Shown piece by piece: positions 1 to 49,145 of a stretch of DNA of 64,000 nucleotides. Origin of the DNA: Octopus sinensis (taxonomy: Eukaryota); the NCBI RefSeq assembly GCF_006345805.1, contig NC_043003.1, forward strand, positions 96,720,001-96,784,000, read 5' to 3'. Both the position numbers and the translations under genes were made by a program. Within the stretch, counting starts at the first letter, position 1, and each line of letters starts with the position of its first letter. The notes below the pieces were generated by a model. That model did no database searches. It saw only the letters and a program-made list of their open reading frames with translations, and had not been told where the DNA came from.

Positions 1-2775
1 GGAACCCCCACCGCAGGCGTTGCCCGAGCGACGGAATAGCAGGAGAGCCTTGCGACACTCCGTGTACCAAGTACCAAGTTTCGATCTACGATTCAGCCAG
101 GTTTCCCATCCACCGAAACTAGTGAACTTGGGAAACATCAGTTTTGCTAGCGAAGACCACACCCGTTCACCATCCAGGTAGAGCCACAGATGTCTTAACC
201 TCAGCGCATGTCTGCGCATCATCAGCCAAGGCATCCCTAGCCCACCCTTTAACGGTTGTTGACAGCAAGTAGAGCGTTTCACAAGTGGTTTCCCGCCCTT
301 CCACAAGAAGTAGAAGAGCTGTCTTTCCAACTTGATCAACCACGAGTCAGGGCAAGGAACGACGGAAAGGCGGTAGGTGATAACCGATGCGATAAACACA
401 TTGGCCACCTCCGCCCTCCCTTTCAGGGATAGCCACCGCCAAGACCAGGTCTTGGCTACTGCAGCCACCTTGCTCGTTACCTCGCCCCAATTCTTCTCTA
501 TTTGGAGGTCTGGACCGAACCAGACCCCTAGCAGTTTAATCGGACCCTCCGTCCAACGTCCCACGACGCTGTCAGGAGGCATCGACTTGCCTCTCCAGGT
601 GCCGAGTTGCAAGCCGACTGACTTTTCGCGATTAACTTTTGCTCCTGTCACCGTCTCGTAAACCTCTATGGCCTTGCCTACTTTACATAGGTGGTCCATT
701 TCGGTTACGATGATGGTGATGTCATCCGCGTACGCTGACACTGATTTTCCATTACCTGGCTGTCTCGGGATGCCGCTCAGTTTTCGCAGTAATGGCTCAA
801 GAGCCATCACGTACAAAAGCGGGGAGAGCGGACACCCTTGACGAACCGAGCGTTTGATTTTGAACGGCTTCGACAAGAAGCCGTTCACCCGAACTACCGA
901 GTCGATGTTATCATAAATTTGGATAATCCACCTGAGGAAGCCAAGGCTCAGCCCGAACTGTGCCAGGGCAGATACCAGGTAACGTTGGTCGACCCTATCA
1001 AAAGCTTTAGATTGGTCTAAATGGACCAGTGCCCCGCCCTTGCCAGAATCACTATTAAACCCCTCTATAGTGTACCGCATTAGATGGAGATTATCCTGAA
1101 TGGATCTGCCCGGAACGGCACAAGTCTGTGCCTCTCCGATCAGACCATCCGCGACACGCGCCAATCTTTTCGATAACACTTTGGCCAAAATCTTCAACTC
1201 TGTGTTTAGCAGAGTGATGGGCCTGAAATTATCAATGCACTCCCCCTTGCTCGGGTCCTTTCTGACGAGAGTCACTACTCCCCGGCGCACAGATCTGGGT
1301 ATAAGCCCGTTCTGCTGCCAGTTCGCATAGACCTCCGCCAGTAGGTGCCCGAACAAGTCTGGCATACTCTTATATAACTCATAGGGTAGACCATCCAAAC
1401 CCGGCGCCTTTCCCGCGCCGCAGTCCGCCATTGCCTCAAACACCTCCCCAGGCGTGATTGGCCCTTCACAGCCCTCCGCATCTCGCCCCGATAAGCGCGG
1501 CAGACCGTCGAGTAGGTCCGTAAAGGCCCTCCTCCTATCCAGTCCGCCGCACTCACCGAAAAGCTGAGCGAAGTGCTCCTGAAAGGCCTCAGACATCTCC
1601 TCGGGTTCGTTTATCAACTCACCTTGTTGGTTCGTCAAAGATCGAATCGTGGCATCGTTACCATGCTGAGCTTCCACCACTCGGGCCCATCTCACGGCGT
1701 TGATTCCTTCACATCCCATATGACGGATTCTAGCCCTGACAATGCAGCCCATGTGTTTGGCCTCGAGGTGCTGGTTTAACACCAGTCTCTTGGACGCCAC
1801 CTGAGCCGCAGAGCCAGTTTTCATGGCTTCCTCTAATTCCTTAACTAGAGTAGTTTCCCTTCTAGCCTCTCTAGCCACTACTCCTATGCTATATCTAATA
1901 GACTCAAACTTGATGGCTCGTTTGAGGGCGTACCACCATTTGTTATTAATGATGGTACCAGATAGTGCCCTCTGAATTATATTCCTAATCCGGTCTTTGT
2001 ACTCCTTAATCGCCAAAAGGGACGTATTAAGTTTCCAGTAACCGGATCCTCTATTTTTAACCTTATCTATGTCAAGCTTACAGGTGACCATTTTATGATC
2101 ACTGTAGCTGATCGGGTAAAACTGTGGACACTTAGCTATTTTACTGTCTACTTTTCTAATTAGTATTCTATCTAAATATGACCTGGAAGATCCGTCGCTG
2201 TTTGACCATGTCCACAATGGAGCGTTCGGAAATTCCAGCCTATAAGGATCTGCTAGCTCAAAGCGGCTTAGCAGTTCCATGAAGCCACTGTTGCCTTTTC
2301 TATCTGGACGCGAGCCAACACAATCTACATCCGCTTTGCAAATTGTGTTAAAGTCTCCTAGCACCACTAATGAATGCGAAGTACCAAGAAAGTTTTCTAG
2401 TTCACGAAAATAATCACTTTGCCCTGTATGGTTGGGTGCGTAAGTTGCAACCAGTCTGATAACTTTACCATTACTGAACGTCAAATCCATGACGACCAGC
2501 CTACCTTCTGGATCTGCAAAAATTAACTTTTTCTCAGAAACCCGGTTTCTTTTTAATAGGACCAACACCCCACTCCCGCCTGTAGGACTGCCAGGAGAGA
2601 AAAAACTCTCGTAGCCGTCAAACAGCGGGAGTAGACCTCTTGGCCCCTCTAACCGGGTTTCTGTAGCAACAATAACATCTAAATTACGCGACCTGATATC
2701 ATGCAGGAAGCGACCTTGCTTCCAGCCTGCTCCCAGGCCGCGCACATTCAAACAACCAACATAAATGTAATCCAT
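1..2775 (-). CDS. ORF2 of U1 (APE endonuclease + RT), partial at window edge
   Basis: ATG at 2775 in the same context as U3; no net indel versus the intact U3 ORF2. Probably missing from the ORF track because its stop lies outside the window. Confidence 0.85.
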   Translation of the reverse strand, partial: MDYIYVGCLNVRGLGAGWKQGRFLHDIRSRNLDVIVATETRLEGPRGLLPLFDGYESFFSPGSPTGGSGVLVLLKRNRVSEKKLIFADPEGRLVVMDLTFSNGKVIRLVATYAPNHTGQSDYFRELENFLGTSHSLVVLGDFNTICKADVDCVGSRPDRKGNSGFMELLSRFELADPYRLEFPNAPLWTWSNSDGSSRSYLDRILIRKVDSKIAKCPQFYPISYSDHKMVTCKLDIDKVKNRGSGYWKLNTSLLAIKEYKDRIRNIIQRALSGTIINNKWWYALKRAIKFESIRYSIGVVAREARRETTLVKELEEAMKTGSAAQVASKRLVLNQHLEAKHMGCIVRARIRHMGCEGINAVRWARVVEAQHGNDATIRSLTNQQGELINEPEEMSEAFQEHFAQLFGECGGLDRRRAFTDLLDGLPRLSGRDAEGCEGPITPGEVFEAMADCGAGKAPGLDGLPYELYKSMPDLFGHLLAEVYANWQQNGLIPRSVRRGVVTLVRKDPSKGECIDNFRPITLLNTELKILAKVLSKRLARVADGLIGEAQTCAVPGRSIQDNLHLMRYTIEGFNSDSGKGGALVHLDQSKAFDRVDQRYLVSALAQFGLSLGFLRWIIQIYDNIDSVVRVNGFLSKPFKIKRSVRQGCPLSPLLYVMALEPLLRKLSGIPRQPGNGKSVSAYADDITIIVTEMDHLCKVGKAIEVYETVTGAKVNREKSVGLQLGTWRGKSMPPDSVVGRWTEGPIKLLGVWFGPDLQIEKNWGEVTSKVAAVAKTWSWRWLSLKGRAEVANVFIASVITYRLSVVPCPDSWLIKLERQLFYFLWKGGKPLVKRSTCCQQPLKGGLGMPWLMMRRHALRLRHLWLYLDGERVWSSLAKLMFPKFTSFGGWETWLNRRSKLGTWYTECRKALLLFRRSGNACGGGS

Positions 2776-2783
2776 TACTTACC

Positions 2784-4179
2784 TTATATCAGTGGTTCGG
2801 TTTTTTCTTGTTCTTCTAACTCTTTTTCTGGGCCTCGTGGGGGAGTCTGACGTAGGCCCTCGAATATATGTGGAGATGTCACATCCAATCTAAGTGGGCC
2901 TACGTCATGGAAGAATTCTGACTTTATCCGCCCGTAATCCTTCCGGCCTATTCTGTAAATTACAAAGTCGTTTTTTTTCACTACTTTCTCCACTTTGGCC
3001 ATGGCTGCCAACACGTTTCCGAGTCTGCTATTTGCTGCCTTTACGGCCATATATGAGTTCATTGACTCTTTTTTCTTTTTTAAGATTACTCTGGGAGGGG
3101 TGGTTTCCGTTTTTCTTTTTTTTTTCCTTCCGGTAATTTTTTTTTTTTTTTTTTTTGCCCACCCCCCCTCATTTATCTTTTCCTCGCTCTTTTTTTCCTC
3201 CGCCGCTGGTTCTGCTGTCACCGTCACCTCCACACCTTCAGTCTTCCCTTCTGGGCCGTCCGACGCTGCTTCTGGTGACACATTATCTTCTTTTTCTTTT
3301 GGCTTAGGTGCTTCCTGCGGTTTGGGTTGGGGTTGGCATTCCGCCCTTACATGACCCTTCTTGCCGCAGCCGAAGCACCTCGGCTTCCTGCCCTCCACGA
3401 AAACTGTTATTTTCTCGTCTTCACTAATCTTTACCGTTTCTGGAATTTCTTCCAGTGTTTGCACCTCCGCCTGAATGGCTATCACTATTTTTTGGCCTTT
3501 CCAAAACTCCTCTTCCTCCACTGTGGCCTGGAGGATGTTTATTTTTTCCTCCAGACCTACCATCACTGCTGCCACCAGACATTCAGCATCTGCCTCTGGC
3601 GGTATGTTGTTCATTGAAATTTTCGACGTCCTTTTTCCTTTGTACAATGGTAGTAAGACAATGTTTTCCGCTTTGATTGGCTCCATCGATAGTTTCTTCG
3701 CTATATCCTCCGTAGTAAAACGCACCTCCACTGTGCCGTATCTTTTTCCTCTGTTTATATACGTTATTTTATCCATAAAAGGTTTTAGACAAAACTATTT
3801 TTTTTTCATCGATTTTTTGGATCATTTTTTTCGTTGTGTCGTAAGTTTTATATATTATTCTTTTTTTTTCTATATCGTCATGTATTTGTATGTTTGTGGC
3901 CACAGTCACTTCTGTGCCTTCTTTTTTTACACAGTCTGCAAATTTTTTAAAATTTTCTATATTTATTTTTTTGATCTTTTTCCCAGCCACTTCAGCGAAT
4001 TTTTTTGCTGGAGTTGATGCTGGTACTGGTTTTTCCATTTTCTTGGGCGACGCCGCCTCTTTTTTCTTCGGCGACAACGCCTCTTTTTTTCTTGGCGACA
4101 ACGCCTCTTTTTTTCCTGGCGACAACGCCGGGTATTCATCCTCGCTCGTCACGGGCGAATAAGAGATGGGGGACTCCAT
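2784..4179 (-). CDS. ORF1 family a (gag-like, CCHC zinc knuckle) of U1, one frameshift near 3795
   Basis: Track ORFs 3769-4188 and 2784-3776; knuckle CFGCGKKGHVRAEC; 2 nt shorter than U3 at the break. Confidence 0.85.
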
Positions 4180-4394
4180 CTTGAACAAATGGCTTTAACA
4201 AGCCTTTGGTAAATCCAAATTAATTGTAGTTTTCCCCCACTGAGGGGGGAACACCAACGCGAAGTCTTCGCGCGAAGGCTGACTTCGTCAGTTAGACAAC
4301 AATAGACAAAACAGGTAGACCAACAGTATATAATAACAGAGATAATAGTACGAGAGCAAAATTATATCAACTTACTAATAACGCAAAAAATTGA

Positions 4395-4405
4395 TTTCCG
4401 CCGTG
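4395..4405 (+). repeat. 11-bp target site/TSD TTTCCGCCGTG (also 6182, 11432, 13368, 15296, 17077, 18879, 20687, 22470, 24251)
   Basis: Identical 11-mer read directly at every unit junction and at the array/flank boundary. Confidence 0.95.
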
Positions 4406-6181
4406 TGATTTTATTATTACCCACAAGGGGCGAACATAGATGGGACAGTACAATCGGGGAACTTAAAATAAGAAAGTAAATGACAAGAAAAGGAAAAAAT
4501 AAAAGTAAAAAATGACATATGAAAGAATATTTACAATGAGATGTAAATGCCCACTCGATCCCCGGAATCGAGAGGTTACATTTTCGTCACATATAGTTCA
4601 CAATATTTTCTTTTTTCTCTTCTTTCTTCTCTCTCTTCTCACAATTCTATACGTATTCCATAATAGTTTTCAATTCTCTAAAGTCAATCACTGAGCCCTC
4701 AGGCAGCCGCTCTCTCACTCGAACACTCGTGTAAAACGTTACACTCTCTCCGGCAGCTCTGAGGAACTCAGCGACTCTTTCTTCGGGGATTAAAGCAGTC
4801 TCCTGCCACTGATCGGTCATCCTGTTGACCCATATATGTCCCTCCGTACTACTTGTCAATTCTTTCGTTTCAGGGCAGAAATGGAAGGTTACTAACTTGT
4901 AGAAGCAGTAATCTTGTTTCCGTCCTACGTTTTCCCTCGTTTTTCTTTTCGGGCTTATTTCTTCCTTGTTCTCCTCTCTTTGTTTCTCTCTTTCTCTCTT
5001 TTTGCCTTCTTTTCTTTCTTCTTCCTTCTCTTGTCTTTTTGGTTCTTTGTCTGTTCTCTCTTTCTCTCGTGTTTTTTGTTCCTTTTCTTTTTCTTTTTGT
5101 GTGCCGTCTTTTCTTTTCGTTTGATTCTGATCTCTCTCTTGTTTTTTTCCTGTTGTTTCTTTTTCCTTTTTCTTTTCCTGACTCTGTTTTGGTTCTATTT
5201 CTTTCTTTTCTTTTATTTCTTTTTCCTTCATTGACTTATTATTTCCTTTCTCTTGTTGTTTTGTTTCCTTTTCTATGTTTTCTTTTTCATTTACCGTATT
5301 CTTCTTTTCTTCAAATTCCTTCTCGCACTCCGCTACGAATTCGTATAACGGGCACTCTTTTTTAATGTGCCCCCTTGTCCCGCACAAGTAGCAGTTTGGC
5401 TTTCTTCCCTCTACAATTACACTGAGGGTTTTCTCATCTTCAATTTCTATTCTGTAGGGGAACCTTTCAATGTCCTCTTTTGTGGCCATCAAACACAGTT
5501 CTACCCCATATCCTCTCCAGTTTATCGCGTTGGACTCCTTAAAGGATTCCACCTCCACTTCCTCTTCTGCTGCTCCTAGAATAGCTGTTGCCAGCCATTC
5601 TGTTTTCACTTCTGGGGGTATATTCGGGATTTTAACCCGGACCCCTCTTCTTCCCTTGTATGAGGGCCACATTATAAATGTTTCCGCTCTTAGTACAGTG
5701 GTAGCCAGTGAGGCTGCAATTTCTTCCGTTGCACATCTCACCTCCACCGTACCAAATTTCTTGCCTCTACTCACGTAGGTCGATTTCCCCATTATGTCTC
5801 CCAGACATTTTTCGATTTCTGCTATCTCCACTCTTGCCAGTTTCTTTGTATTTTTGTCTTGGGTTCTATATGTTACAGTCTTGTTTTCTTTGTCCTCTTT
5901 TGCTTTCGCGGGGGGGATTAGCTTCACGCTATCACCCTCCCTTTTGAATAGCTTTTCGTATTCTTTGAGTTTACTCTTCTCAAAGAAAACATCCTTCACG
6001 ATTATCGACGAATCATTATTTTTCTTTCCCGTGACCCCCGCGTAAGTCGCCATGACTAGAGGGTCAATTCACCTTCTTCGGAAGGTTTCCACACGTGGAG
6101 GCAAACGCCTCGCGCGATATTAATCACTTTACACAACAAAATTTCAACGTCTAATCACAGATAACAACACACTTGAGTAAA
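4406..6181 (-). mobile_element. Array unit U2: ORF1-only non-autonomous element, family b
   Basis: 1.78 kb between two target 11-mers; single ORF1, no RT; 3'-terminal ~50 nt shared with U3. Confidence 0.9.
4647..6053 (-). CDS. Intact ORF1 family b, 468 aa: RGKKFGTVEVR block, CCHC knuckle, K/E-rich linker
   Basis: Uninterrupted ORF; CYLCGTRGHIKKEC; homologous to ORF1a (YINRGKRYGTVEVRF; VEGRKPRCFGC). Confidence 0.92.
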   Translation of the reverse strand: MATYAGVTGKKNNDSSIIVKDVFFEKSKLKEYEKLFKREGDSVKLIPPAKAKEDKENKTVTYRTQDKNTKKLARVEIAEIEKCLGDIMGKSTYVSRGKKFGTVEVRCATEEIAASLATTVLRAETFIMWPSYKGRRGVRVKIPNIPPEVKTEWLATAILGAAEEEVEVESFKESNAINWRGYGVELCLMATKEDIERFPYRIEIEDEKTLSVIVEGRKPNCYLCGTRGHIKKECPLYEFVAECEKEFEEKKNTVNEKENIEKETKQQEKGNNKSMKEKEIKEKKEIEPKQSQEKKKEKETTGKKQERDQNQTKRKDGTQKEKEKEQKTREKERTDKEPKRQEKEEERKEGKKREREKQREENKEEISPKRKTRENVGRKQDYCFYKLVTFHFCPETKELTSSTEGHIWVNRMTDQWQETALIPEERVAEFLRAAGESVTFYTSVRVRERLPEGSVIDFRELKTIMEYV

Positions 6182-6432
6182 TTTCCGCCGTGTGATTTTA
6201 TTATTACCCACAAGGGGCGAACATAGATGGGACAATACAATCTGGGTCAGACAAACGAATGGGTTTTTACACTAAATCGAATTTAAAAATTTTCATGAAT
6301 TACAATAAATGGACAGAAATCGAATGATGGGACAGACCGGAAGACGTTACGGGTGGAGTGGGTGCGGGTTTAGCTCGGACCCCACGAGCCCCGCCTCCCC
6401 ACTGATACTTTTGGTTGCACTTGGTATTACAT

Positions 6433-9400
6433 TTATGTTGTATCTTTCACTCGCAACTTTCGTGCTACATCCTTCCATCGTTCTTCATACACTCTCCTAG
6501 TCAGGCATATTCTTTCCAGCCCTATCTTCCTTTTCAGGTGAAAGATGAAATAGTTCATCAAACCAGGGCCGGAGATGAACTTGCCTGACTGTAAACCTTT
6601 CATTCTCGTCTTCCATATCACCTCTTTCGCAATTGCTACTACAACGAGAAAACGAAACTTACCTTCATTCACGAGGAAATCCGGTGGGTCAATTTTTGTA
6701 ATCGACTCAGTCGACAGCTGTACTCTTCGTGTACCTGACAACAGGTGTTCGGCATAAACCCACACCTCAGACACGTCCGGACAATGAACAATCGCGTGCG
6801 GGACGGTTTCCCTATCCCGCCCGCATCTTGGACATATCGGACTGTCTTGGCCACCGTGCCTTGCGAGTTTATCCCGAACAGGTAGAGCTCCTCTGTAGCA
6901 TTGCCATGCCAGAGACTTCTGGAAGTTGTCCAGTGTCCTCGGCTCGAACGTACGTCGGAACAGACTGGCCAGCTGATTATCGTCGAGACCTAGGGTTTCC
7001 CCCAAGGTATCTTCACATTCCGCCTCTACCAACCCTCTATAGAGGAATGTGGTGGAACCCCCACCGCAGGCGTTGCCCGAGCGACGGAATAGCAGGAGAG
7101 CCTTGCGACACTCCGTGTACCAAGTACCAAGTTTCGATCTACGATTCAGCCAGGTTTCCCATCCACCGAAACTAGTGAACTTGGGAAACATCAGTTTTGC
7201 TAGCGAAGACCACACCCGTTCACCATCCAGGTAGAGCCACAGATGTCTTAACCTCAGCGCATGTCTGCGCATCATCAGCCAAGGCATCCCTAGCCCACCC
7301 TTTAACGGTTGTTGACAGCAAGTAGAGCGTTTCACAAGTGGTTTCCCGCCCTTCCACAAGAAGTAGAAGAGCTGTCTTTCCAACTTGATCAACCACGAAT
7401 CAGGGCAAGGAACGACGGAAAGGCGGTAGGTGATAACCGATGCGATAAACACATTGGCCACCTCCGCCCTCCCTTTCAGGGATAGCCACCGCCAAGACCA
7501 GGTCTTGGCTACTGCAGCCACCTTGCTCGTTACCTCGCCCCAATTCTTCTCTATTTGGAGGTCTGGACCGAACCAGACCCCTAGCAGTTTAATCGGACCC
7601 TCCGTCCAACGTCCCACGACGCTGTCAGGAGGCATCGACTTGCCTCTCCAGGTGCCGAGTTGCAAGCCGACTGACTTTTCGCGATTAACTTTTGCTCCTG
7701 TCACCGTCTCGTAAACCTCTATGGCCTTGCCTACTTTACATAGGTGGTCCATTTCGGTTACGATGATGGTGATGTCATCCGCGTACGCTGACACTGATTT
7801 TCCATTACCTGGCTGTCTCGGGATGCCGCTCAGTTTTCGCAGTAATGGCTCAAGAGCCATCACGTACAAAAGCGGGGAGAGCGGACACCCTTGACGAACC
7901 GAGCGTTTGATTTTGAACGGCTTCGACAAGAAGCCGTTCACCCGAACTACCGAGTCGATGTTATCATAAATTTGGATAATCCACCTGAGGAAGCCAAGGC
8001 TCAGCCCGAACTGTGCCAGGGCAGACACCAGGTAACGATGGTCGACCCTATCAAAAGCTTTAGATTGGTCTAAATGGACCAGTACCCCACCCTTGCCAGA
8101 ATCACTATTAAACCCCTCTATAGTGTACCGCATTAGATGGAGATTATCCTGAATGGATCTGCCCGGAACGGCACTTGTCTGTGCCTCTCCGATCAGACCA
8201 TCCGCGACACGCGCCAATCTTTTCGATAACACTTTGGCCAAAATCTTCAACTCTGTGTTTAGCAGAGTGATGGGCCTGAAATTATCAATGCACTCCCCCT
8301 TGCTCGGGTCCTTTCTGACGAGAGTCACTACTCCCCGGCGCACAGATCTGGGTATAAGCCCGTTCTGCTGCCAGTTCGCATAGACCTCCGCCAGTAGGTG
8401 CCCGAACAAGTCTGGCATACTCTTATATAACTCATAGGGTAGACCATCCAAACCCGGCGCCTTGCCCGCGCCGCAGTCCGTCATTGCCTCAACCACCTCC
8501 TCAGGCGTGATTGGCCCTTCACAGCCCTCCGCATCTCGCCCCGATAAGCGCGGCAGCCCGTCGAGTAGGTCCGTAAAGGCCCTCCTCCTATCCAGTCCGC
8601 CGCACTCACCGAAAAGCTGAGCGAAGTGCTCCTGAAAGGCCTCACATATCTCCTCGGGTTCGTTTATCAACTCACCTTGTTGGTTCGTCAAAGATCGAAT
8701 CGTGGCATCGTTACCATGCCGAGCTTCCACCACTCGGGCCCATCTCACGGCGTTGATTCCTTCACATCCCATATGGCGGATTCTAGCCCTGACAATGCAG
8801 CCCATGTGTTTGGCCTCGAGGTGCTGGTTTAACACCAGTCTCTTGGACGCCACCTGAGCCGTAGAGCCAGTTTTCATGGCTTCCTCTAATTCCTTAACTA
8901 GAGTAGTTTCCCTTCTAGCCTCTCTAGCCACTACTCCTATGCTATATCTAATAGACTCAAACTTGATGGCTCGTTTGAGGGCGTACCACCATTTGTTATT
9001 AATGATGGTACCAGATAGTGCCCTCTGAATTATATTCCTAATCCGGTCTTTGTACTCCTTAATCGCCAAAAGGGACGTATTAAGTTTCCAGTAACCGGAT
9101 CCTCTATTTTTAACCTTATCTATGTCAAGCTTACAAGTGACCATTTTATGATCACTGTAGCTGATCGGGTAAAACTGTGGACACTTAGCTATTTTACTGT
9201 CTACTTTTCTAATTAGTATTCTATCTAAATATGACCTGGAAGATCCGTCGCTGTTTGACCATGTCCACAATGGAGCGTTCGGAAATTCCAGCCTATAAGG
9301 ATCTGCTAGCTCAAAGCGGCTTAGCAGTTCCATGAAGCCACTGTTGCCTTTTCTATCTGGACACGAGCCAACATAATCTACATCCGCTTTGCAAATTGTG

Positions 9401-9828
9401 TTAAAGTCTCCTAGCACCACTAATGAATGCGAAGTACCAAGAAAGTTTTCTAGTTCACGAAAATAATCACTTTGCCCTGTATGGTTGGGTGCGTAAATTG
9501 CAACCAGTCTGATAACTTTACCGTTACTGAACGTCAAATCCATGACGACCAGCCTACCTTCTGGATCTGCAAAAATTAACTTTTTCTCAGAAACCCGGTT
9601 TCTTTTTAATAGGAACAACACCCCACTCCCGCCTGTAGGACTGCCAGGAGAGAAAAAACTCTCGTAGCCGTCAAACAGCGGGAGTAGACCTCTTGGCCCC
9701 TCTAACCGGGTTTCTGTAGCAACAATAACATCTAAATTACGCGACCTGATATCATGCAGGAAGCGACCTTGCTTCCAGTCTGCTCCCAGGCCGCGCACAT
9801 TCAAACAACCAACATAAATGTAATCCAT
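6433..9828 (-). CDS. Intact ORF2, 1131 aa: APE endonuclease, reverse transcriptase, C-terminal CCHC finger
   Basis: APE motifs LNVRG, ATETR, LGDFN, YLDRIL, SDHK; RT motifs PGLDG, RPITLLN, DQSKAFDRV, QGCPLSP, YADD; CPRC...H...C. Layout typical of Tx1-like L1-clade elements. Confidence 0.97.
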   Translation of the reverse strand: MDYIYVGCLNVRGLGADWKQGRFLHDIRSRNLDVIVATETRLEGPRGLLPLFDGYESFFSPGSPTGGSGVLFLLKRNRVSEKKLIFADPEGRLVVMDLTFSNGKVIRLVAIYAPNHTGQSDYFRELENFLGTSHSLVVLGDFNTICKADVDYVGSCPDRKGNSGFMELLSRFELADPYRLEFPNAPLWTWSNSDGSSRSYLDRILIRKVDSKIAKCPQFYPISYSDHKMVTCKLDIDKVKNRGSGYWKLNTSLLAIKEYKDRIRNIIQRALSGTIINNKWWYALKRAIKFESIRYSIGVVAREARRETTLVKELEEAMKTGSTAQVASKRLVLNQHLEAKHMGCIVRARIRHMGCEGINAVRWARVVEARHGNDATIRSLTNQQGELINEPEEICEAFQEHFAQLFGECGGLDRRRAFTDLLDGLPRLSGRDAEGCEGPITPEEVVEAMTDCGAGKAPGLDGLPYELYKSMPDLFGHLLAEVYANWQQNGLIPRSVRRGVVTLVRKDPSKGECIDNFRPITLLNTELKILAKVLSKRLARVADGLIGEAQTSAVPGRSIQDNLHLMRYTIEGFNSDSGKGGVLVHLDQSKAFDRVDHRYLVSALAQFGLSLGFLRWIIQIYDNIDSVVRVNGFLSKPFKIKRSVRQGCPLSPLLYVMALEPLLRKLSGIPRQPGNGKSVSAYADDITIIVTEMDHLCKVGKAIEVYETVTGAKVNREKSVGLQLGTWRGKSMPPDSVVGRWTEGPIKLLGVWFGPDLQIEKNWGEVTSKVAAVAKTWSWRWLSLKGRAEVANVFIASVITYRLSVVPCPDSWLIKLERQLFYFLWKGGKPLVKRSTCCQQPLKGGLGMPWLMMRRHALRLRHLWLYLDGERVWSSLAKLMFPKFTSFGGWETWLNRRSKLGTWYTECRKALLLFRRSGNACGGGSTTFLYRGLVEAECEDTLGETLGLDDNQLASLFRRTFEPRTLDNFQKSLAWQCYRGALPVRDKLARHGGQDSPICPRCGRDRETVPHAIVHCPDVSEVWVYAEHLLSGTRRVQLSTESITKIDPPDFLVNEGKFRFLVVVAIAKEVIWKTRMKGLQSGKFISGPGLMNYFIFHLKRKIGLERICLTRRVYEERWKDVARKLRVKDTT

Positions 9829-9836
9829 TACTTACC

Positions 9837-17076: not shown

Positions 17077-17087
17077 TTTCCGCCGTG

Positions 17088-18878
17088 GGATTTTATTACT
17101 ACCCACAAGGGGCGAACATAGAGGGGACAATACAATCGAGGAACTTAAAATAAGAAAGCGAAATGACAAGAAAAGGAAAAAATTAAAAGTAAAAAATGAC
17201 ATATGAAAGAATATTTACAATGAGATGTAAATGCCCACTCGATCCCCGAAATCGAGAGGTTACATTTTCGTCACATATATTTTACAATATTTTCTTTTTT
17301 TTTTTTTTCTTCTTTTTCTCTCTCTTCTCACAATTTTATACGTATTCCATAATACCTTTCAAGTCTCTAAAGTCAATCACTGAGCCCTCAGGCAGCCGCT
17401 CTTTCATTCGAACACCCGTGTAAAAAATTACACTCTCTCCAGCTGCTCTGAGGAACTCAGCGACTCTTTCTTCGGGGATCAGAGCAGTCTCCTGCCACTG
17501 ATCAGTCATCCTGTTGACCCACACATGTCCCTCCGTACTACATGTCAATTCCTTCATTTCAGGGGTGAAATGGAAGGTTATTAACTTGTAGTAATCTTGT
17601 TTTCGTCCTACGTTTTCCCTCGTTTTTCTTTTCGGGCTTACTTCTTCCTTGTTCTCCTCTCTTTGTTTCTCTCTTTCTCTCTTTTTGCTTTCTTTTCTTT
17701 CTTCTTCCTTCTCTTGTCTTTTTGGTTCTTTGTCTGTTCTCTCTTTCTCTCGTGTTTTATGTTCCTTTTCTTTTTCTTTTTGTGTGCCGTCTTTTCTTTT
17801 CGTTTGATTCTGATCTCTCTCTTGTTTTTTTCCTGTTGTTTCTTTTTCCTTTTTCTTTTCCTGACTCTGTTTTGGTTCCATTTCTTTCTTTTCTTTTATA
17901 TCTTTTTCTTTCGTTGACTATTATTTCCTTTCTCTTGTTGTTTTGTCTCCTTTTCTATGTTTTCTTTTTCATTTACCTTATTCTTCCTTTCTTCAAGTTC
18001 TGCTCGTACTCCGCTATGAATTCGTATAGCGGGCACTCTTTTTTAATGTGCCCCCTTGTCCCGCACAAGTAGCAGTTTGGCTTTCTACCCTCTACAATTA
18101 CACTGAGGGTTTTCTCGTCTTCGATTTCTATTCTGTAGGGGAACCTTTCAATGTCCTCTTTTGTGGCCATCAAACACAGTTCTACCCCATATCCTCTCCA
18201 GTTTACTGCATTGGACTCCTTAAAGGATTCCACCTCCACTTCCTCTTCTGCTGCTCCCAGAATAGCTGTTGCCAGCCACTCTGTTTTTATTTCTGGGGGT
18301 ATATTCGGGATTTTAACCCGGACCCCTCTTCTTCCCTTGTATGAGGGCCACATTATGAATGTTTCCGCTCTTAGAACAGTGGTAGCCAGTGAGGCTGCAA
18401 TTTCTTCCGTTGCACATCTCACCTCCACCGTACCAAATTTTTTTCCTCTACTCACGTAGGTCGATTTATCCATTATGTCTCCCAGACATTTTTCGATCTC
18501 TGCTATCTCCACTCTTGCCAGTTTCTTTGTACTTTTGTCCTGGGTTCTATACGTTACAGTTTTGTTTTCTTTGTCCTCTTTTGCTTTCGCGGGGGGGATT
18601 AGCTTCACGCTATCACCCTCCCTTTTGAATAGCTTTTCGTATTCTTTGAGTTTATTCTTCTCAAAGAAAACATCCTTCACGACTATCGAGCAATCATTAC
18701 TTCTCTTTCCCGTGACCCCCGCGTAAGTCGCCATGACTAGAGGGTCAATTCACCTTCTTCGGAAGGTTTCCACACGTAGAGGCAAACGCCTCGCGCGATA
18801 ATTATCAATTTACACAACAAAATTCTGTCTAGTCACAGATAACAACACGTAAACATATACAACAACACATTGGGTAAA
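17088..18878 (-). mobile_element. Array unit U7: ORF1-only element, family b variant (ORF1 17336-18734)
   Basis: Near-identical to U6; ~20-nt extra segment with a repeated AACAACAC near its 5' end (~18841-18868). Confidence 0.9.
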
Positions 18879-18889
18879 TTTCCGCCGTG

Positions 18890-20686
18890 GGATTTTATTA
18901 CTACCCACAAGGGGCGAACATAGAGGGGACAATACAATCGAGGAACTTAAAATAAGAAAGCGAAATGACAAGAAAAGGAAAAAATTAAAAGTAAAAAATG
19001 ACATATGAAAGAATATTTACAATGAGATGTAAATGCCCACTCGATCCCCGAAATCGAGAGGTTACATTTTCGTCACATATATTTTACAATATTTTCTTTT
19101 TTTTTTTTTTTCTTCTTTCTTCTCTCTCTTCTCACAATTTTATACGTATTCCATAATACCTTTCAAGTCTCTAAAGTCAATCACTGAGCCCTCAGGCAGC
19201 CGCTCTTTCATTCGAACACCCGTGTAAAAAATTACACTCTCTCCAGCTGCTCTGAGGAACTCAGCGACTCTTTCTTCGGGGATCAGAGCAGTCTCCTGCC
19301 ACTGATCAGTCATCCTGTTGACCCACACATGTCCCTCCGTACTACATGTCAATTCCTTCATTTCAGGGGTGAAATGGAAGGTTATTAACTTGTAGTAATC
19401 TTGTTTTCGTCCTACGTTTTCCCTCGTTTTTCTTTTCGGGCTTACTTCTTCCTTGTTCTCCTCTCTTTGTTTCTCTCTTTCTCTCTTTTTGCTTTCTTTT
19501 CTTTCTTCTTCCTTCTCTTGTCTTTTTGGTTCTTTGTCTGTCTCTCTTTCTCTCGTGTTTTATGTTCCTTTTCTTTTTCTTTTTGTGTGCCGTCTTTTCT
19601 TTTCGTTTGATTCTGATCTCTCTCTTGTTTTTTTCCTGTTGTTTCTTTTCCTTTTTGCATACCATCTTTTCCTTTCTCTTGGTTCTGTTCCTTCTCTTGT
19701 TCTTTTCCTGCTTTTTCTCTCTTTCTCTCGTGTTTTATGTTCCTTTTCTTTTTCTTTTTCTTTTTCTTTTTCTTTTTCTTTTTCTTTTTCTTTTTCATTT
19801 ACCTTATTCTTCCTTTCTTCAAGTTCCTGCTCGTACTCCGCTATGAATTCGTATAGCGGGCACTCTTTTTTAATGTGCCCCCTTGTCCCGCACAAGTAGC
19901 AGTTTGGCTTTCTACCCTCTACAATTACACTGAGGGTTTTCTCGTCTTCGATTTCTATTCTGTAGGGGAACCTTTCAATGTCCTCTTTTGTGGCCATCAA
20001 ACACAGTTCTACCCCATATCCTCTCCAGTTTACTGCATTGGACTCCTTAAAGGATTCCACCTCCACTTCCTCTTCTGCTGCTCCAGAATAGCTGTTGCCA
20101 GCCACTCTGTTTTTATTTCTGGGGGTATATTCGGGATTTTAACCGGACCCCCTCTTCTTCCCTTGTATGAGGGCCACATTATGAATGTTTCCGCTCTTAG
20201 AACAGTGGTAGCCAGTGAGGCTGCAATTTCTTCCGTTGCACATCTCACCTCCACCGTACCAAATTTTTTTCCTCTACTCACGTAGGTCGATTTATCCATT
20301 ATGTCTCCCAGACATTTTTCGATCTCTGCTATCTCCACTCTTGCCAGTTTCTTTGTACTTTTGTCCTGGGTTCTATACGTTACAGTTTTGTTTTCTTTGT
20401 CCTCTTTTGCTTTCGCGGGGGGGATTAGCTTCACGCTATCACCCTCCCTTTTGAATAGCTTTTCGTATTCTTTGAGTTTATTCTTCTCAAAGAAAACATC
20501 CTTCACGACTATCGAGCAATCATTACTTCTCTTTCCCGTGACCCCCGCGTAAGTCGCCATGACTAGAGGGTCAATTCACCTTCTTCGGAAGGTTTCCACA
20601 CGTAGAGGCAAACGCCTCGCGCGATAATTATCAATTTACACAACAAAATTCCTGTCTAGTCACAGATAACAACACACTTGGGTAAA
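18890..20686 (-). mobile_element. Array unit U8: ORF1-only element, family b variant with a chimeric internal segment
   Basis: As U6 but with a family-c tract at ~19640-19720 and a (TTTTTC)n run at ~19745-19795. Confidence 0.85.
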
Positions 20687-20697
20687 TTTCCGCCGTG

Positions 20698-22469
20698 GGA
20701 TTTTATTACTACCCACAAGGGGCGAACATAGAGGGGACAATACAATCGAGGAACTTAAAATAAGAAAGCGAAATGACAAGAAAAGGAAAAAATTAAAAGT
20801 AAAAAATGACATATGAAAGAATATTTACAATGAGATGTAAATGCCCACTCGATCCCCGAAATCGAGAGGTTACATTTTCGTCACATATATTTTACAATAT
20901 TTTCTTTTTTTTTTTTTTTTCTTTTTCTTCTCTCTCTTCTCACAATTTTATACGTATTCCATAATACCTTTCAAGTCTCTAAAGTCAATCACTGAGCCCT
21001 CAGGCAGCCGCTCTTTCATTCGAACACCCGTGTAAAAAATTACACTCTCTCCAGCTGCTCTGAGGAACTCAGCGACTCTTTCTTCGGGGATCAGAGCAGT
21101 CTCCTGCCACTGATCAGTCATCCTGTTGACCCACACATGTCCCTCCGTACTACATGTCAATTCCTTCATTTCAGGGGTGAAATGGAAGGTTATTAACTTG
21201 TAGTAATCTTGTTTTCGTCCTACGTTTTCCCTCGTTTTTCTTTTCGGGCTTACTTCTTCCTTGTTCTCCTCTCTTTGTTTCTCTCTTTCTCTCTTTTTGC
21301 TTTCTTTTCTTTCTTCTTCCTTCTCTTGTTTTTGGTTCTTTGTCTGTTCTCTCTTTCTCTCGTGTTTTATGTTCCTTTTCTTTTTCTTTTTGTGTGCCGT
21401 CTTTTCTTTTCGTTTGATTCTGATCTCTCTCTTGTTTTTTTCCTGTTGTTTCTTTTCCTTTTTCTTTTCCTGACTCTGTTTTGGTTCCATTTCTTTCTTT
21501 TCTTTTATATCTTTTTCTTTCGTTGACTTATTATTTCCTTTCTCTTGTTGTTTTGTCTCCTTTTCTATGTTTTCTTTTTCATTTACCTTATTCTTCCTTT
21601 CTTCAAGTTCCTGCTCGTACTCCGCTATGAATCGTATAGCGGGCACTCTTTTTTAATGTGCCCCCTTGTCCCGCACAAGTAGCAGTTTGGCTTTCTACCC
21701 TCTACAATTACACTGAGGGTTTTCTCGTCTTCGATTTCTATTCTGTAGGGGAACCTTTCAATGTCCTCTTTTGTGGCCATCAAACACAGTTCTACCCCAT
21801 ATCCTCTCCAGTTTACTGCATTGGACTCCTTAAAGGATTCCACCTCCACTTCCTCTTCTGCTGCTCCCAGAATAGCTGTTGCCAGCCACTCTGTTTTTAT
21901 TTCTGGGGGTATATTCGGGATTTTAACCGGACCCCCTCTTCTTCCCTTGTATGAGGGCCACATTATGAATGTTTCCGCTCTTAGAACAGTGGTAGCCAGT
22001 GAGGCTGCAATTTCTTCCGTTGCACATCTCACCTCCACCGTACCAAATTTTTTTCCTCTACTCACGTAGGTCGATTTATCCATTATGTCTCCCAGACATT
22101 TTTCGATCTCTGCTATCTCCACTCTTGCCAGTTTCTTTGTACTTTTGTCCTGGGTTCTATACGTTACAGTTTTGTTTTCTTTGTCCTCTTTTGCTTTCGC
22201 GGGGGGGATTAGCTTCACGCTATCACCCTCCCTTTTGAATAGCTTTTCGTATTCTTTGAGTTTATTCTTCTCAAAGAAAACATCCTTCACGACTATCGAG
22301 CAATCATTACTTCTCTTTCCCGTGACCCCCGCGTAAGTCGCCATGACTAGAGGGTCAATTCACCTTCTTCGGAAGGTTTCCACACGTAGAGGCAAACGCC
22401 TCGCGCGATAATTATCAATTTACACAACAAAATTCCTGTCTAGTCACAGATAACAACACACTGGGTAAA
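20698..22469 (-). mobile_element. Array unit U9: ORF1-only element, family b variant (ORF1 20948-22344)
   Basis: Near-identical to U6/U7; bounded by target 11-mers. Confidence 0.9.
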
Positions 22470-22480
22470 TTTCCGCCGTG

Positions 22481-24250
22481 GGATTTTATTACTACCCACA
22501 AGGGGCGAACATAGAGGGGACAATACAATCGAGGAACTTAAAATAAGAAAGCGAAATGACAAGAAAAGGAAAAAATTAAAAGTAAAAAATGACATATGAA
22601 AGAATATTTACAATGAGATGTAAATGCCCACTCGATCCCCGAAATCGAGAGGTTACATTTTCGTCACATATATTTTACAATATTTTCTTTTTTTTTTTTT
22701 TTTTCTTCTTTCTTCTCTCTCTCTCACATTTTATACGTATTCCATAATACCTTTCAAGTCTCTAAAGTCAATCACTGAGCCCTCAGGCAGCCGCTCTTTC
22801 ATTCGAACACCCGTGTAAAAAATTACACTCTCTCCAGCTGCTCTGAGGAACTCAGCGACTCTTTCTTCGGGGATCAGAGCAGTCTCCTGCCACTGATCAG
22901 TCATCCTGTTGACCCACACATGTCCCTCCGTACTACATGTCAATTCCTTCATTTCAGGGGTGAAATGGAAGGTTATTAACTTGTAGTAATCTTGTTTTCG
23001 TCCTACGTTTTCCTCGTTTTTCTTTTCGGGCTTACTTCTTCCTTGTTCTCCTCTCTTTGTTTCTCTCTTCTCTCTTTTTGCTTTCTTTTCTTTCTTCTTC
23101 CTTCTCTTGTCTTTTTGGTTCTTTGTCTGTTCTCTCTTTCTCTCGTGTTTTATGTTCCTTTTCTTTTTCTTTTTGTGTGCCGTCTTTTCTTTTCGTTTGA
23201 TTCTGATCTCTCTCTTGTTTTTTTCTGTTGTTTCTTTTTCCTTTTTCTTTTCCTGACTCTGTTTTGGTTCCATTTCTTTCTTTTCTTTTATATCTTTTTC
23301 TTTCGTTGACTTATTATTTCCTTTCTCTTGTTGTTTTGTCTCCTTTTCTATGTTTTCTTTTTCATTTACTTATTCTTCCTTTCTTCAAGTTCCTGCTCGT
23401 ACTCCGCTATGAATTCGTATAGCGGGCACTCTTTTTTAATGTGCCCCCTTGTCCTGCACAAGTAGCAGTTTGGCTTTCTACCCTCTACAATTACACTGAG
23501 GGTTTTCTCGTCTTCGATTTCTATTCTGTAGGGGAACCTTTCAATGTCCTCTTTTGTGGCCATCAAACACAGTTCTACCCCATATCCTCTCCAGTTTACT
23601 GCATTGGACTCCTTAAAGGATTCCACCTCCACTTCCTCTTCTGCTGCTCCCAGAATAGCTGTTGCCAGCCACTCTGTTTTTATTCTGGGGGTATATTCGG
23701 GATTTTAACCCGGACCCCTCTTCTTCCCTTGTATGAGGGCCACATTATGAATGTTTCCGCTCTTAGAACAGTGGTAGCCAGTGAGGCTGCAATTTCTTCC
23801 GTTGCACATCTCACCTCCACCGTACCAATTTTTTTCCTCTACTCACGTAGGTCGATTTATCCATTATGTCTCCCAGACATTTTTCGATCTCTGCTATCTC
23901 CACTCTTGCCAGTTTCTTTGTACTTTTGTCCTGGGTTCTATACGTTACAGTTTTGTTTTCTTGTCCTCTTTTGCTTTCGCGGGGGGGATTAGCTTCACGC
24001 TATCACCCTCCCTTTTGAATAGCTTTTCGTATTCTTTGAGTTTATTCTTCTCAAAGAAAACATCCTTCACGACTATCGAGCAATCATTACTTCTCTTTCC
24101 CGTGACCCCCGCGTAAGTCGCCATGACTAGAGGGTCAATTCACCTTCTTCGGAAGGTTTCCACACGTAGAGGCAAACGCCTCGCGCGATAATTATCAATT
24201 TACACAACAAAATTCCTGTCTAGTCACAGATAACAACACACTTGGGTAAA
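22481..24250 (-). mobile_element. Array unit U10: ORF1-only element, family b variant (ORF1 22731-24124); last unit before flank
   Basis: Near-identical to U6-U9; followed by TTTCCGCCGTG and non-array flank. Confidence 0.9.
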
Positions 24251-24340
24251 TTTCCGCCGTGGGTTCAAATATTCTTTCTTCTCTACATTGTATACTTTAT
24301 AGACAATAGACTTTTCTTTAATTTCATTTTTTATTATCCA
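24251..24340 (-). pseudogene. Upstream part of a decayed Tx1-like ORF1 relic forming the array's right flank
   Basis: Minus-strand translation IKEKSIVYKVYNVEKKEYLN resembles ORF1a IEKKRIIYKTYDTTKK and ORF1b ENKTVTYRTQDK; paralogous to 46206-46300. Confidence 0.6.
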
Positions 24341-49141: not shown

Positions 49142-49145
49142 TATA

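What the first reader, a model, noticed from the sequence alone, without database searches (positions are those of the whole stretch)
1..24261. Self-regenerating head-to-tail array of three Tx1-type retroelement families joined at one 11-bp target
Seen: ten junctions carry exactly TTTCCGCCGTG, between elements of three divergent ORF1 families in mixed order (a+ORF2, b, a+ORF2, c, c, b x5). Plain tandem duplication cannot join different families at the same base. Known: some Tx1-clade elements are sequence-specific (Tx1L in Tx1D, Keno in U2 snRNA genes, Dewa in tRNA arrays), and a TSD recreates the target. Inference: a site-specific APE retrotransposon and its dependents insert repeatedly at this motif and build a mixed array of at least 24 kb, reminiscent of HeT-A/TART arrays but interstitial. 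I do not recognise this target.
Basis: partly seen in the sequence, partly recalled or inferred. Interest (0 to 1): 0.92.

Follow-up and report, generated by a model that had tools for sequence, protein, structure and literature searches.

The report
Octopus site-specific LINE stacking arrays
An octopus jumping gene of the LINE type, plus short relatives that carry only its first gene, insert again and again at one exact spot inside an old decayed relative, building ordered head-to-tail stacks on several chromosomes; this is a new variant of a known behaviour, not a new kind of element.

Summary
There are ten exact TTTCCGCCGTG junctions (0.42 expected) between a 5.25-kb APE+RT LINE ("a") and two ORF1-only families ("b", "c"), all on the minus strand.

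The 11-mer is a target-site duplication. It is neither an element terminus nor, probably, the recognition motif. A solo "c" at 44288-46205 is flanked by a different 11-mer, TTTCCTCCATG, on both sides.

Five Octopus vulgaris loci on five chromosomes carry similar arrays at the same nucleotide of the same ~1.2-kb dispersed repeat ("d"). This repeat is itself a decayed ORF1-bearing relative. The "a" copies differ by 0.6-1.8% between loci, whereas the d flanks differ by 4-9.5%. The insertions are therefore independent and site-specific.

Three lines of evidence indicate that arrays grow one way, at the edge next to d's upstream half:
- derived 11-mer variants always lie 5' of the consensus;
- "a" is always the 3'-most element;
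- b subfamilies are layered in parallel across chromosomes.

Insertions still occurred where the 11-mer had been altered or deleted (L006, L007, L009, L010). This points to recognition of the upstream purine-rich tract.

Verdict: a new variant of known site-specific non-LTR behaviour (R1 arrays, Tx1L/Tx1D, HeT-A/TART-like partners). Tx1-clade placement was not tested by phylogeny.

The parts
1..4394 (-). Element a, copy U0, cut by the window start. Holds the ORF2 N-terminal 925 codons, ORF1 and the 5' end.
   Evidence: 98.1% to the full a copy. ORF2 tblastn is contiguous over aa 1-925 at 98.4%. ORF1 at 2784-3776 is 330 aa.
4395..4405 (-). Junction 11-mer (TSD copy), CACGGCGGAAA in element orientation. 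Nine further copies lie at 6182, 11432, 13368, 15296, 17077, 18879, 20687, 22470 and 24251.
4406..6181 (-). Element b, copy U1, from the older 'alpha-like' subfamily. ORF1-only, with an intact 468-aa ORF1 at 4647-6053.
   Evidence: It is 1.8-2.1% from L006_5-8 and L007_1 and 5.0-7.1% (5.0-5.7% excluding U7) from U5-U9.
6193..11431 (-). Element a, full-length copy U2 (5239 bp). Intact ORF2 at 6433-9828 (APE+RT+zf-RVT). ORF1 is broken in this copy.
11443..15295 (-). Two c elements: U3 at 11443-13367 and U4 at 13379-15295, with the 11-mer at 13368-13378 between them. ORF1-only, with ORF1 split by a frameshift.
   Evidence: 99.2% to each other. ORFs listed.
15307..24250 (-). Five b elements, U5-U9, each separated by the 11-mer. 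U6 (17088-18878) has a ~19-nt duplicated 5' end. U7 (18890-20686) has a variant low-complexity region.
24262..24960 (-). Upstream half of target repeat d (dUP) flanking the 5' edge of the array. It ends ...AAGAATATTTGAACC next to the 11-mer and contains 147-bp repeats and (ACAG)n.
   Evidence: 94% to 46218-47507. Homologous to the upstream flanks of L006, L007, L009 and L010.
43788..44276 (-). Downstream half of target repeat d (dDOWN) at the solo locus. It is an ORF1-like remnant (FEKCLG.., RGGKFATIEARF.., PLYLGRRTSR..).
   Evidence: 91-97% to the flanks of L007 and L008. ORF1 profile scores are 15-24 bits, against at most 6 for shuffles and -3 for the reverse strand.
44277..46216 (-). Solo c element (44288-46205) with 11-bp TSD TTTCCTCCATG at 44277-44287 and 46206-46216.
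   Evidence: 98.45% to U3. Both flanking 11-mers are identical and differ from the array 11-mer at 2 positions.
46217..46895 (-). Upstream half of target repeat d (dUP) at the solo locus.

Best explanation
The window comes from an octopus of the O. vulgaris/sinensis group. It holds two occupied copies of one insertion site for a family of site-specific non-LTR retrotransposons. Element a (5.2 kb) is autonomous: ORF1 with a CCHC knuckle, and an L1-like ORF2 with APE, RT and a C-terminal zinc domain. Elements b and c (1.8-1.9 kb) keep only an ORF1. They share with a just the last ~45-65 nt, a conserved 3' tail (...GTCCCATCTATGTTCGCCCCTTGTGGGTAATAATAAAATCA). They are presumably copied in trans by a's ORF2 protein through that tail (inferred). 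All of them insert, in one orientation, at one nucleotide position of a ~1.2-kb dispersed repeat d, which is a decayed ORF1-bearing relative. Insertion is by target-primed reverse transcription with an 11-nt stagger, which duplicates the 11 bases after the nick. This is shown by the TSDs: consensus CATGGAGGAAA in d, and CACGGCGGAAA at the window array. The nick lies immediately 3' of d's upstream half and the new element is placed downstream of it. The upstream half therefore survives intact next to a fresh copy of the 11-mer, and the site can be used again. Arrays thus grow only at their 5' edge (inferred from polarity): the 3'-most element is the founder and the 5'-most is the newest. Recognition probably lies in the purine-rich tract ...GAGAAGAAAGAAGA about 8 nt upstream of the nick rather than in the 11-mer (inferred; one informative locus, L010). 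Some local unequal exchange may add copies on top of this.
For: The element is real: Pfam domains; the best solved-structure match is human L1 ORF2p, E=1.8e-67 over aa 3-867; an a copy with both ORFs intact exists at L007.

The 11-mer is a true TSD: the solo c has its own 11-mer on both sides.

Site specificity: arrays at the same position of d occur in the window (x2), L006, L007, L008, L009 and L010, on 5 O. vulgaris chromosomes, and flanks outside d are unrelated. The a copies are 0.6-1.8% apart while the d flanks are 4-9.5% apart, so insertions postdate the dispersal of d.

Trans retrotransposition rather than local duplication only: b subfamilies are shared between chromosomes (L006_8 vs L007_1 0.6%; L006_1-3 vs L008_1-4 0.7-1.8%). 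They are layered along arrays, with the alpha-like type 3' and the beta type 5' in L006, and U1 lying 3' of U5-9 in the window.

Polarity:
- wherever the 3' end is visible (L007, L008, L009), the 3'-most junctions keep the consensus CATGGAGGAAA;
- derived variants lie 5' and, once they arise, recur in the more 5' junctions (L006 8/8; L007 2/2; L009 2/2; a largely graded series in L008);
- a is the 3'-most element in 4 of 4 arrays with a visible 3' end;
- b copies in L006, L008 and L009 carry locus-specific 5' caps that look copied from the neighbouring a 5' end, for example TCAATTTGCGT+GTTGTTATCTG.

The 11-mer is dispensable: at L010, a d copy lacking TTTGAACA, the 11-mer and 293 bp of dDOWN still received c and a. 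Both have an 11-bp TSD, TTCCAGYCTGT, located 8 nt after AAGAAGA as at canonical sites.

Shared 3' tail across a, b, c, X and f.
Against: - There is no genome-wide census. All loci outside the window were found through annotated ORF1 proteins, so empty d copies and a/b/c copies outside d could not be counted (one search found no empty d in ~230 kb).
- The fixed-offset, upstream-recognition idea rests on one rearranged locus (L010) plus tolerance of 11-mer variants.
- Runs of near-identical neighbours (L006_5-7 0.2-0.6%; L008_1-4 0.1-0.7%; window U5, U6, U8, U9 0.3-1.1%) and the eight identical junctions in L006 are equally compatible with unequal exchange.
- The L008 junction series is not strictly monotonic.
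- The solo c shows that a need not be the founder.
- No covariation supports a structured 3' tail.
- Trans-mobilisation and the TPRT details are inferred from what is known of other LINEs, not shown.
- The 3' end of the window array is outside the window.
Confidence: 0.78

Rival explanations
1. Double insertion followed by unequal exchange (the Drosophila R1-array model). Only a few true insertions happened per locus. Most copies, especially the b runs, were made by unequal sister-chromatid exchange or replication slippage between tandem units.
For: Neighbouring b copies are nearly identical. All eight L006 junctions, including the b 5' caps, are the same sequence. The R1 array precedent is described in PMC5932611.
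Against: Mixed order of three families in the window. Near-identical b copies sit on different chromosomes, and subfamilies are layered rather than scrambled. Junctions and 5' caps are heterogeneous in L008, and U6 has a private 5' duplication. In L006 two b subfamilies that are 4-5% apart share one junction type, which fits inheritance of the junction from the resident neighbour at each insertion better than duplication of whole units.
Confidence: 0.3
2. One reading: the 11-mer itself is the recognised target, and every junction in an array is an equally good new target.
For: Ten identical 11-mers in the window. The consensus CATGGAGGAAA recurs at several independent d copies.
Against: Insertions occurred next to strongly altered or replaced 11-mers (L006, L007, L009, L010). 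The polarity of variants and subfamily layering argue against use of internal junctions. The solo site differs at 2 of 11 positions yet was used.
Confidence: 0.12
3. The 11-mer is part of the element (a shared terminus), and arrays form by end-to-end addition or template jumping, as in telomeric HeT-A/TART arrays.
For: All families share a conserved 3' tail that abuts the 11-mer. An AATAAA signal sits just before it, so transcripts may read into it.
Against: The 11-mer differs between loci and matches the local d sequence. The solo c has the local variant on both sides. The 11-mer is present in d upstream of the first element and downstream of the last. Near-identical b copies on different chromosomes carry different 11-mers.
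Confidence: 0.03
4. Assembly artefact: the mixed array is a mis-join or collapse of repeats in a long-read assembly.
For: Differences among the window b copies are dominated by single-base deletions that break ORF1, typical of long-read consensus error. Raw reads cannot be checked.
Against: Arrays with the same architecture (dUP-(b/c/X)n-a-dDOWN) are present at five loci of an independent chromosome-level assembly, GCA_951406725.2. Junctions are base-precise.
Confidence: 0.05

Closest known systems
R1 of Drosophila (28S rDNA-specific APE LINE) and its tandem R1 arrays
   Same: An APE-type non-LTR element that inserts at one defined site with a TSD. Re-insertion at the duplicated site gives head-to-tail units separated by a short piece of target (33 nt of rDNA in the R1 array; PMC5932611).
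   Different: The target here is a decayed transposon relic dispersed on several chromosomes, not a multicopy gene. Arrays are mixed, holding autonomous and ORF1-only families. The evidence points to serial insertion at one edge rather than mainly unequal exchange. The ORF2 is L1-like, not R1-clade.
Tx1L in Tx1D (Xenopus composite elements) and other target-specific Tx1-clade families (Keno, Mutsu, Dewa, Kibi, Koshi)
   Same: An L1-group APE LINE with a CCHC-type ORF1 and strict target specificity. As with Tx1L/Tx1D, the target lies inside another mobile element. The Tx1 clade is one of the three groups holding most target-specific families (PMC4640811).
   Different: d has no terminal inverted repeats and is a relative of the inserting elements rather than a DNA transposon. 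Long stacked arrays and ORF1-only partners are not part of the Tx1 description as I know it. Tx1-clade membership of element a is untested.
HeT-A / TART / TAHRE telomeric arrays of Drosophila
   Same: Head-to-tail mixed arrays in one orientation, growing at one end. A Gag/ORF1-only member (HeT-A) depends on RT-encoding partners. Subfamily turnover is recorded along the array.
   Different: The arrays here are interstitial, with target sequence on both sides. Each unit is bounded by a TSD, so insertion is endonuclease-dependent rather than addition to a free end. There is no sign of a host function.
HAL1 (half-L1) of mammals
   Same: A non-autonomous LINE derivative that keeps only ORF1 and is thought to use the parent's ORF2 protein (own knowledge).
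   Different: b, c, X and f are several divergent families (28-72% ORF1 identity). They share only the 3' tail with the autonomous element and are site-specific.

Membership tests
Non-LTR retrotransposon, L1 group (L1/Tx1) | ORF2 with an N-terminal APE endonuclease, a central RT and a C-terminal zinc-binding region; no RNase H | tested here: met
   Pfam Exo_endo_phos 4.5e-13 (aa 23-227), RVT_1 3.8e-32 (511-752), zf-RVT 1.4e-8 (971-1023). The best PDB sequence match is human L1 ORF2p at 1.8e-67, against R2 proteins at 1e-26.
Tx1 clade | RT domain groups with Tx1 references in a phylogeny | not testable with these tools
   No named Tx1 or L1 reference set was available. Indirect hints only: one distant hit carries the source name 'Transposon TX1', and O. 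vulgaris repeat annotation lists 13 recently active L1-Tx1 families (PMC13282606).
Tx1 clade | Type I ORF1 (RRM plus CCHC knuckle) rather than mammalian Transposase_22 | tested here: inconclusive
   One CCHC knuckle has a Pfam match in the b and c ORF1s. In a the CX2CX4HX4C motif is visible in the sequence but there is no Pfam match. No Pfam RRM hit. The AF2 model is too poor to judge (pLDDT 42). Type I variants in animals are described as consistent with Tx1 (PMC5203782).
Target-specific non-LTR retrotransposons | Independent copies occupy the same nucleotide position and orientation of a repeated target | tested here: met
   Window array, window solo, L006, L007, L008, L009 and L010 are all at the same position of d in the same orientation. 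Contexts outside d are unrelated. a is younger than d. A genome-wide census was not possible.
Target-specific non-LTR retrotransposons | Target-site duplication derived from the local target | tested here: met
   11-bp TSDs that differ by locus.
HeT-A/TART-type telomeric arrays | Located at chromosome ends, added to a free end without TSD | tested here: not met
   Arrays are flanked on both sides by the halves of d and lie tens of Mb inside chromosomes. Every unit is bounded by a TSD.
Tx1L/Tx1D-type composite | Target element is a DNA transposon with terminal inverted repeats | tested here: not met
   No inverted termini in the reconstructed empty d. d carries an ORF1-like remnant instead.
R1-type tandem array by double insertion plus unequal exchange | Units separated by identical target duplication; array homogeneous through exchange | tested here: inconclusive
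   TSD between units is met. However, arrays are heterogeneous in family, layered by subfamily, and share subfamilies across chromosomes. Exchange is not excluded for the b runs.

The most novel reading that the evidence does not exclude
The ORF2 protein reads a purine-rich tract in the upstream half of d. It nicks at a fixed offset (about 8 nt) with an 11-nt stagger, whatever sequence lies at the cut. Insertion therefore never destroys the landing pad. Each d copy becomes a one-way stack that records, layer by layer, a founder autonomous element followed by waves of ORF1-only parasites. The same LINE group targets other members of its own extended family as well: family f inserts in the head of the SINE that shares its 3' tail. 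This would be a self-contained 'transposons living in transposons' niche with a cut-at-a-distance LINE endonuclease.
Probability: 0.35. Interest if true: 0.75.

Novelty: new variant of a known kind. Interest (0 to 1): 0.62.

Why it matters
Site-specific LINEs are the natural models for targeted, RNA-templated DNA insertion, and few APE-type examples are understood. This octopus system offers three things.
- A target that is not a host gene, so the element's 'safe haven' is a dead relative.
- Several ORF1-only families competing for one enzyme at one site.
- Arrays whose order appears to be a time series, which makes the succession of parasite and autonomous lineages readable from a single locus.
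If recognition really lies upstream with a fixed-offset cut, the endonuclease tolerates any sequence at the insertion point. That bears on how APE domains acquire specificity. It also explains part of the recently active L1-Tx1 fraction reported for O. vulgaris.

Tried and rejected
- Rfam at gathering thresholds on the whole window found nothing. Rfam at E<=1 on the L007 downstream flank gave only microsatellite-driven miRNA noise. The target is therefore not a known RNA gene. ARAGORN found no tRNA at the site.
- The empty d has no inverted terminal repeats.
- The exact ORF2 protein is not in the gene-position index. The closest ORF2 relatives (58%, 39%, 37%, 30%) sit on short or metagenomic contigs with no tandem structure and no similar termini, so they say nothing about the target.
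- The O. sinensis orthologous or paralogous region (L005) loses homology before reaching the target site.
- The AF2 model of ORF1-b was too poor (mean pLDDT 42), so no fold search was run.
- RNAalifold on the shared 3' tails found only a 4-bp invariant hairpin with no covariation.
- No unoccupied d copy exists in the ~230 kb of octopus DNA in hand.
- Considered and rejected: telomere-like end addition, because TSDs are present; the 11-mer as an element terminus; and dispersal of whole arrays by segmental duplication. The last is true only for the window's two loci and probably L008, which share flanks beyond d.


Full report
**1. Observation**

TTTCCGCCGTG occurs ten times, always on the + strand, and nowhere else even with one mismatch. 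The chance expectation is 0.42, and 0 of 100 shuffles reached ten. The motif copies delimit units of 1787, 5250, 1936, 1928, 1781, 1802, 1808, 1783 and 1781 bp.

Unit-against-unit BLAST gives three families:
- a: 5250 bp at 6182-11431, plus a partial copy at 1-4394 that is 98.1% identical.
- b: U1, and U5-U9. U5-U9 are 96.4-99.4% alike. U1 is ~94% to them.
- c: U3 and U4, 99.2% alike. They align to b at ~75% over part of their length only.

The strong T-richness of the + strand and the ORF list show that every element is encoded on the minus strand. In element orientation the array therefore reads 5'-flank, b x5, c, c, a, b, a(cut)-3'.

**2. What the elements are**

The 1131-aa ORF2 of a (6433-9828) has Exo_endo_phos, RVT_1 and zf-RVT domains. 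Its best match among solved structures is human L1 ORF2p, E=1.8e-67 over residues 3-867, far ahead of R2 proteins.

ORF1 proteins of b and c carry one CCHC knuckle by Pfam. The ORF1 of a has the same CX2CX4HX4C motif in its sequence but no Pfam match. b and c are 1.8-1.9 kb and hold nothing but an ORF1. ORF1 identities are b-c 72%, a-b 38.5% and a-c 38%.

a, b and c share only their last ~45-65 nt. This is a sequence block conserved across five or six families...GATTGTATTGTCCCATCTATGTTCGCCCCTTGTGGGTAATAATAAAATCA. It contains a 4-bp invariant hairpin but shows no covariation. That b and c are copied in trans by a's ORF2 protein through this tail is an inference from the usual LINE/SINE logic.

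An L1-like ORF2 plus a CCHC ORF1 in an animal fits the Tx1 group as described in PMC5203782, but I could not run an RT phylogeny.

The host is an octopus. A beta-1,3-galactosyltransferase ORF at 37939-38556 is 95% identical to an O. sinensis protein. Annotated O. vulgaris proteins are 93-96% identical to ORF1-b.

**3. The 11-mer is a target-site duplication**

A solo c copy at 44288-46205 (98.45% to U3) is flanked on both sides by TTTCCTCCATG. This differs from the array's 11-mer at two positions. An element-borne terminus would not change on both sides to match the locus.

The sequence to the right of the solo copy (46218-47507) is 94% identical to that right of the array (24263-25579). The window contains a patchy ~20-kb segmental repeat. 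The two sites are therefore paralogous positions that were hit separately.

**4. Related loci**

Using the O. vulgaris proteins, I fetched six loci from an independent chromosome-level assembly, GCA_951406725.2. Five of them carry arrays of the same elements:

| Locus | Chromosome record | Array, 5'->3' in element orientation |
|---|---|---|
| L006 | OX597814 | dUP - b x8 - a (cut by locus end) |
| L007 | OX597816 | dUP - b - a - dDOWN |
| L008 | OX597820 | (cut) b x8 - a - dDOWN |
| L009 | OX597830 | dUP - X - b - c(deleted) - a - dDOWN |
| L010 | OX597821 | dUP - c - a - dDOWN(partly deleted) |

dUP (~480-700 bp) ends ...AAGAAGATTTGAACA. dDOWN (~490 bp) starts GCACCTTCGAAAAGTGTCTTGG. They are homologous in all loci and in both window sites, and homology stops at the ends of this ~1.2-kb unit. 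L008 is the exception. It shares 2.7 kb with the window's solo locus and is probably a paralogue or orthologue of it.

I call this unit d. It has no inverted termini and no Rfam match. Its downstream half, read with frameshifts, is an ORF1 remnant collinear with residues ~70-170 of ORF1-b: FEKCLG..M.., RGGKFATIEARFESTERA, NFSFLPLYLGRRTSR..PPEVEVGWIVATLL. A profile built from the a, b, c and X ORF1s scores 15-24 bits on the forward strand. The reverse strand scores about -3, and 60 shuffles reached at most 6.

The target is thus a defined position inside a decayed relative, in the same orientation as that relative.

**5. Independent, site-specific insertion**

Over 2.6 kb of ORF2, a copies from different chromosomes differ by 0.6-1.8% (L010: ~5%). 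The d halves that flank them differ by 4-9.5%. d therefore dispersed first and was hit later, repeatedly, at the same base.

L007's a copy has an intact 324-aa ORF1 and 1129-aa ORF2. The window's U2 has an intact ORF2, so the family looks recently active.

- other copies do not have unrelated flanks;
- the 11-mer does not travel with the element;
- a second assembly shows the same architecture.
Support from long reads could not be checked.

**6. How arrays grow**

Four observations point to one-way growth at the edge next to dUP.

(i) Junction polarity. In element orientation the consensus 11-mer of d is CATGGAGGAAA. It is seen at the solo site, at both a-proximal junctions of L008 and L009, at a|dDOWN in L007 and at b|a in L006. 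Wherever the 3' end is visible, the 3'-most junctions are consensus and derived variants lie 5'. Once a variant appears, it recurs in the junctions further 5':
- L006: CGTGTCGGAAA, 8 of 8.
- L007: CATGGCTCCAA, 2 of 2.
- L009: CATGTCTGAAA, 2 of 2.
- L008: a largely graded series from CATCGAGGAAA to CAGCGAGGAAA, with some irregularities.

This is what a TSD copied from the current 5'-most junction would give, with the known imprecision of 5' junction formation as the source of new variants.

(ii) a is the 3'-most element in all four arrays whose 3' end is visible.

(iii) The b distance matrix shows subfamilies shared between chromosomes and layered along arrays:
- L006_8 vs L007_1, 0.6%. Both lie directly 5' of a.
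- L006_1-3 vs L008_1-4, 0.7-1.8%.
- L006_5-7, 0.2-0.6% among themselves.
- In the window, the alpha-like U1 lies 3' of the U5-U9 group.

(iv) b copies in L006, L008 and L009 carry locus-specific 5' caps that look like the first bases of the neighbouring a fused to b. An example is TCAATTTGCGT|GTTGTTATCTG, against native TTTACCCAAGTGTGTTGTTATCTG. In L006 the same cap is shared by two b subfamilies that are 4-5% apart. This fits second-strand priming from the resident neighbour.

Points (i) to (iv) are inference from pattern, not demonstration.

**7. What is recognised**

Insertions continued at altered 11-mers (L006, L007, L009).

In L010 the d copy lacks TTTGAACA, the 11-mer and 293 bp of dDOWN; CCTGCCAA replaces TTTGAACA. 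It nevertheless received both c and a. Both are bounded by an 11-bp TSD of unrelated sequence, TTCCAGYCTGT, that starts 8 nt after AAGAAGA, exactly as at canonical sites.

Small deletions 22-30 nt upstream in L006 and L007 do not shift the nick.

The common denominator is the purine-rich tract from about -22 to -8. I therefore think the 11-mer is only the stagger and the determinant lies upstream. This rests on one rearranged locus.

A weak extra point concerns U6-U9 in the window. They end ...AAAATCC instead of ...AAAATCA, matching the C that precedes the 11-mer in this locus's dUP. That is expected if they were inserted next to dUP with a 12-nt duplication.

**8. Rivals**

- Unequal exchange after a few double insertions, the model for the Drosophila R1 array (PMC5932611), can explain runs of near-identical b units and may contribute. 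It does not explain mixed families, cross-chromosome subfamily sharing, layering or heterogeneous junctions.
- The 11-mer as an element terminus is contradicted by points 3 and 4.
- An assembly artefact is unlikely given the second assembly. However, differences among the window's b copies are mostly single-base deletions that break ORF1. These may be consensus errors.

**9. Comparison with what is known**

Tandem insertion of target-specific LINEs is known: R1, and Utopia-1_NVit 'occasionally inserted in tandem' (PMC4640811). Targeting of another mobile element is known from Tx1L/Tx1D. ORF1-only partners are known from HeT-A and HAL1. L1-Tx1 elements are listed among recently active O. vulgaris repeats, with 13 families and 421 insertions (PMC13282606). 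I found no mention there of site specificity or arrays.

What appears new is the combination:
- a relic of a related element as the target;
- several ORF1-only families sharing the site;
- ordered, apparently unidirectional stacks on at least five chromosomes.

I rate it a new variant of a known kind.

**10. Limits**

- There was no DNA search of octopus genomes, so there is no census of d or of off-target copies.
- All loci outside the window were ascertained through ORF1 proteins.
- The window array's 3' end is not visible.
- There is no RT phylogeny, and the ORF1 fold could not be modelled.

Noticed in passing
L011:10240-12420 (O. vulgaris OX597815.1); window 49190-49420 (-); L007:480-1000 (-): A further ORF1-only family ('f', ~76% to b/c) sits in tandem behind another element's 3' tail. 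Its junction/TSD is different and 17 bp long: GAAACGTYAGCACGCCG. Its downstream flank is the body of a dispersed tRNA-like SINE. Unoccupied copies of that SINE, with the site intact, are in the window and in L007. The SINE ends in the same conserved 3' tail as a/b/c/X/f, so this LINE group probably mobilises it, and one member inserts into it.
   Followed up: partly
L009:8594-10284: A fourth ORF1-only family ('X', ORF1 28-36% identical to a/b/c, with the same 3' tail type) forms the 5'-most unit of the L009 array. Its 5' junction has lost the 11-mer, which may have closed that array to further growth.
   Followed up: partly
L007:480-1000 (-): Two copies of the tRNA-like SINE lie head-to-tail, the second 5'-truncated. 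A ~23-bp sequence (TATTGTGTACTCTCTTTTCCTAA) is repeated before the first copy and between the two. This looks like a double insertion at one non-specific site.
   Followed up: no
window 15307-24250: Differences among the five b copies are mostly private single-base deletions that break ORF1. The U1 copy and many O. vulgaris copies have long open ORF1s. These may be long-read consensus errors rather than real mutations.
   Followed up: partly
window 24262-44276 vs 46217-64000: A patchy ~20-kb segmental (tandem) repeat, 88-97% identical. Each unit carries a d copy and a beta-1,3-galactosyltransferase gene or pseudogene (37939-39102, split into two ORFs; paralogue at 61260-61739). An O. sinensis locus (L005) is 93-97% identical to part of it.
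   Followed up: partly
window 41661-42632 (+): A 323-aa ORF with a GIY-YIG nuclease domain (Pfam 3.2e-5). It is probably the C-terminal part of a Penelope-like element and is followed by a (TTC)n tract at 42791-42969.
   Followed up: partly
window 55792-55885 (+): ARAGORN calls a 94-nt tRNA-Thr(GGT)-like sequence. It is too long for a plain tRNA and is possibly a SINE head or a pseudogene.
   Followed up: no
window 30437-30489, 54200-54284, 58063-58147: Short tandem arrays of a 17-bp unit, GTGGATAGGTCGCACCA, recur in both orientations inside the segmental repeat.
   Followed up: no
L007:11290-11598 and window 10997-11461 (-): Element a has a ~100-150-aa ORF upstream of its ORF1 whose end resembles the N-terminus of b/c ORF1 (..AEVAGKK..LEKF..KKEG..). 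In a, ORF1 is either split by a conserved frameshift or stop, or preceded by a separate small ORF. The same arrangement appears in U0, U2 and L007.
   Followed up: no
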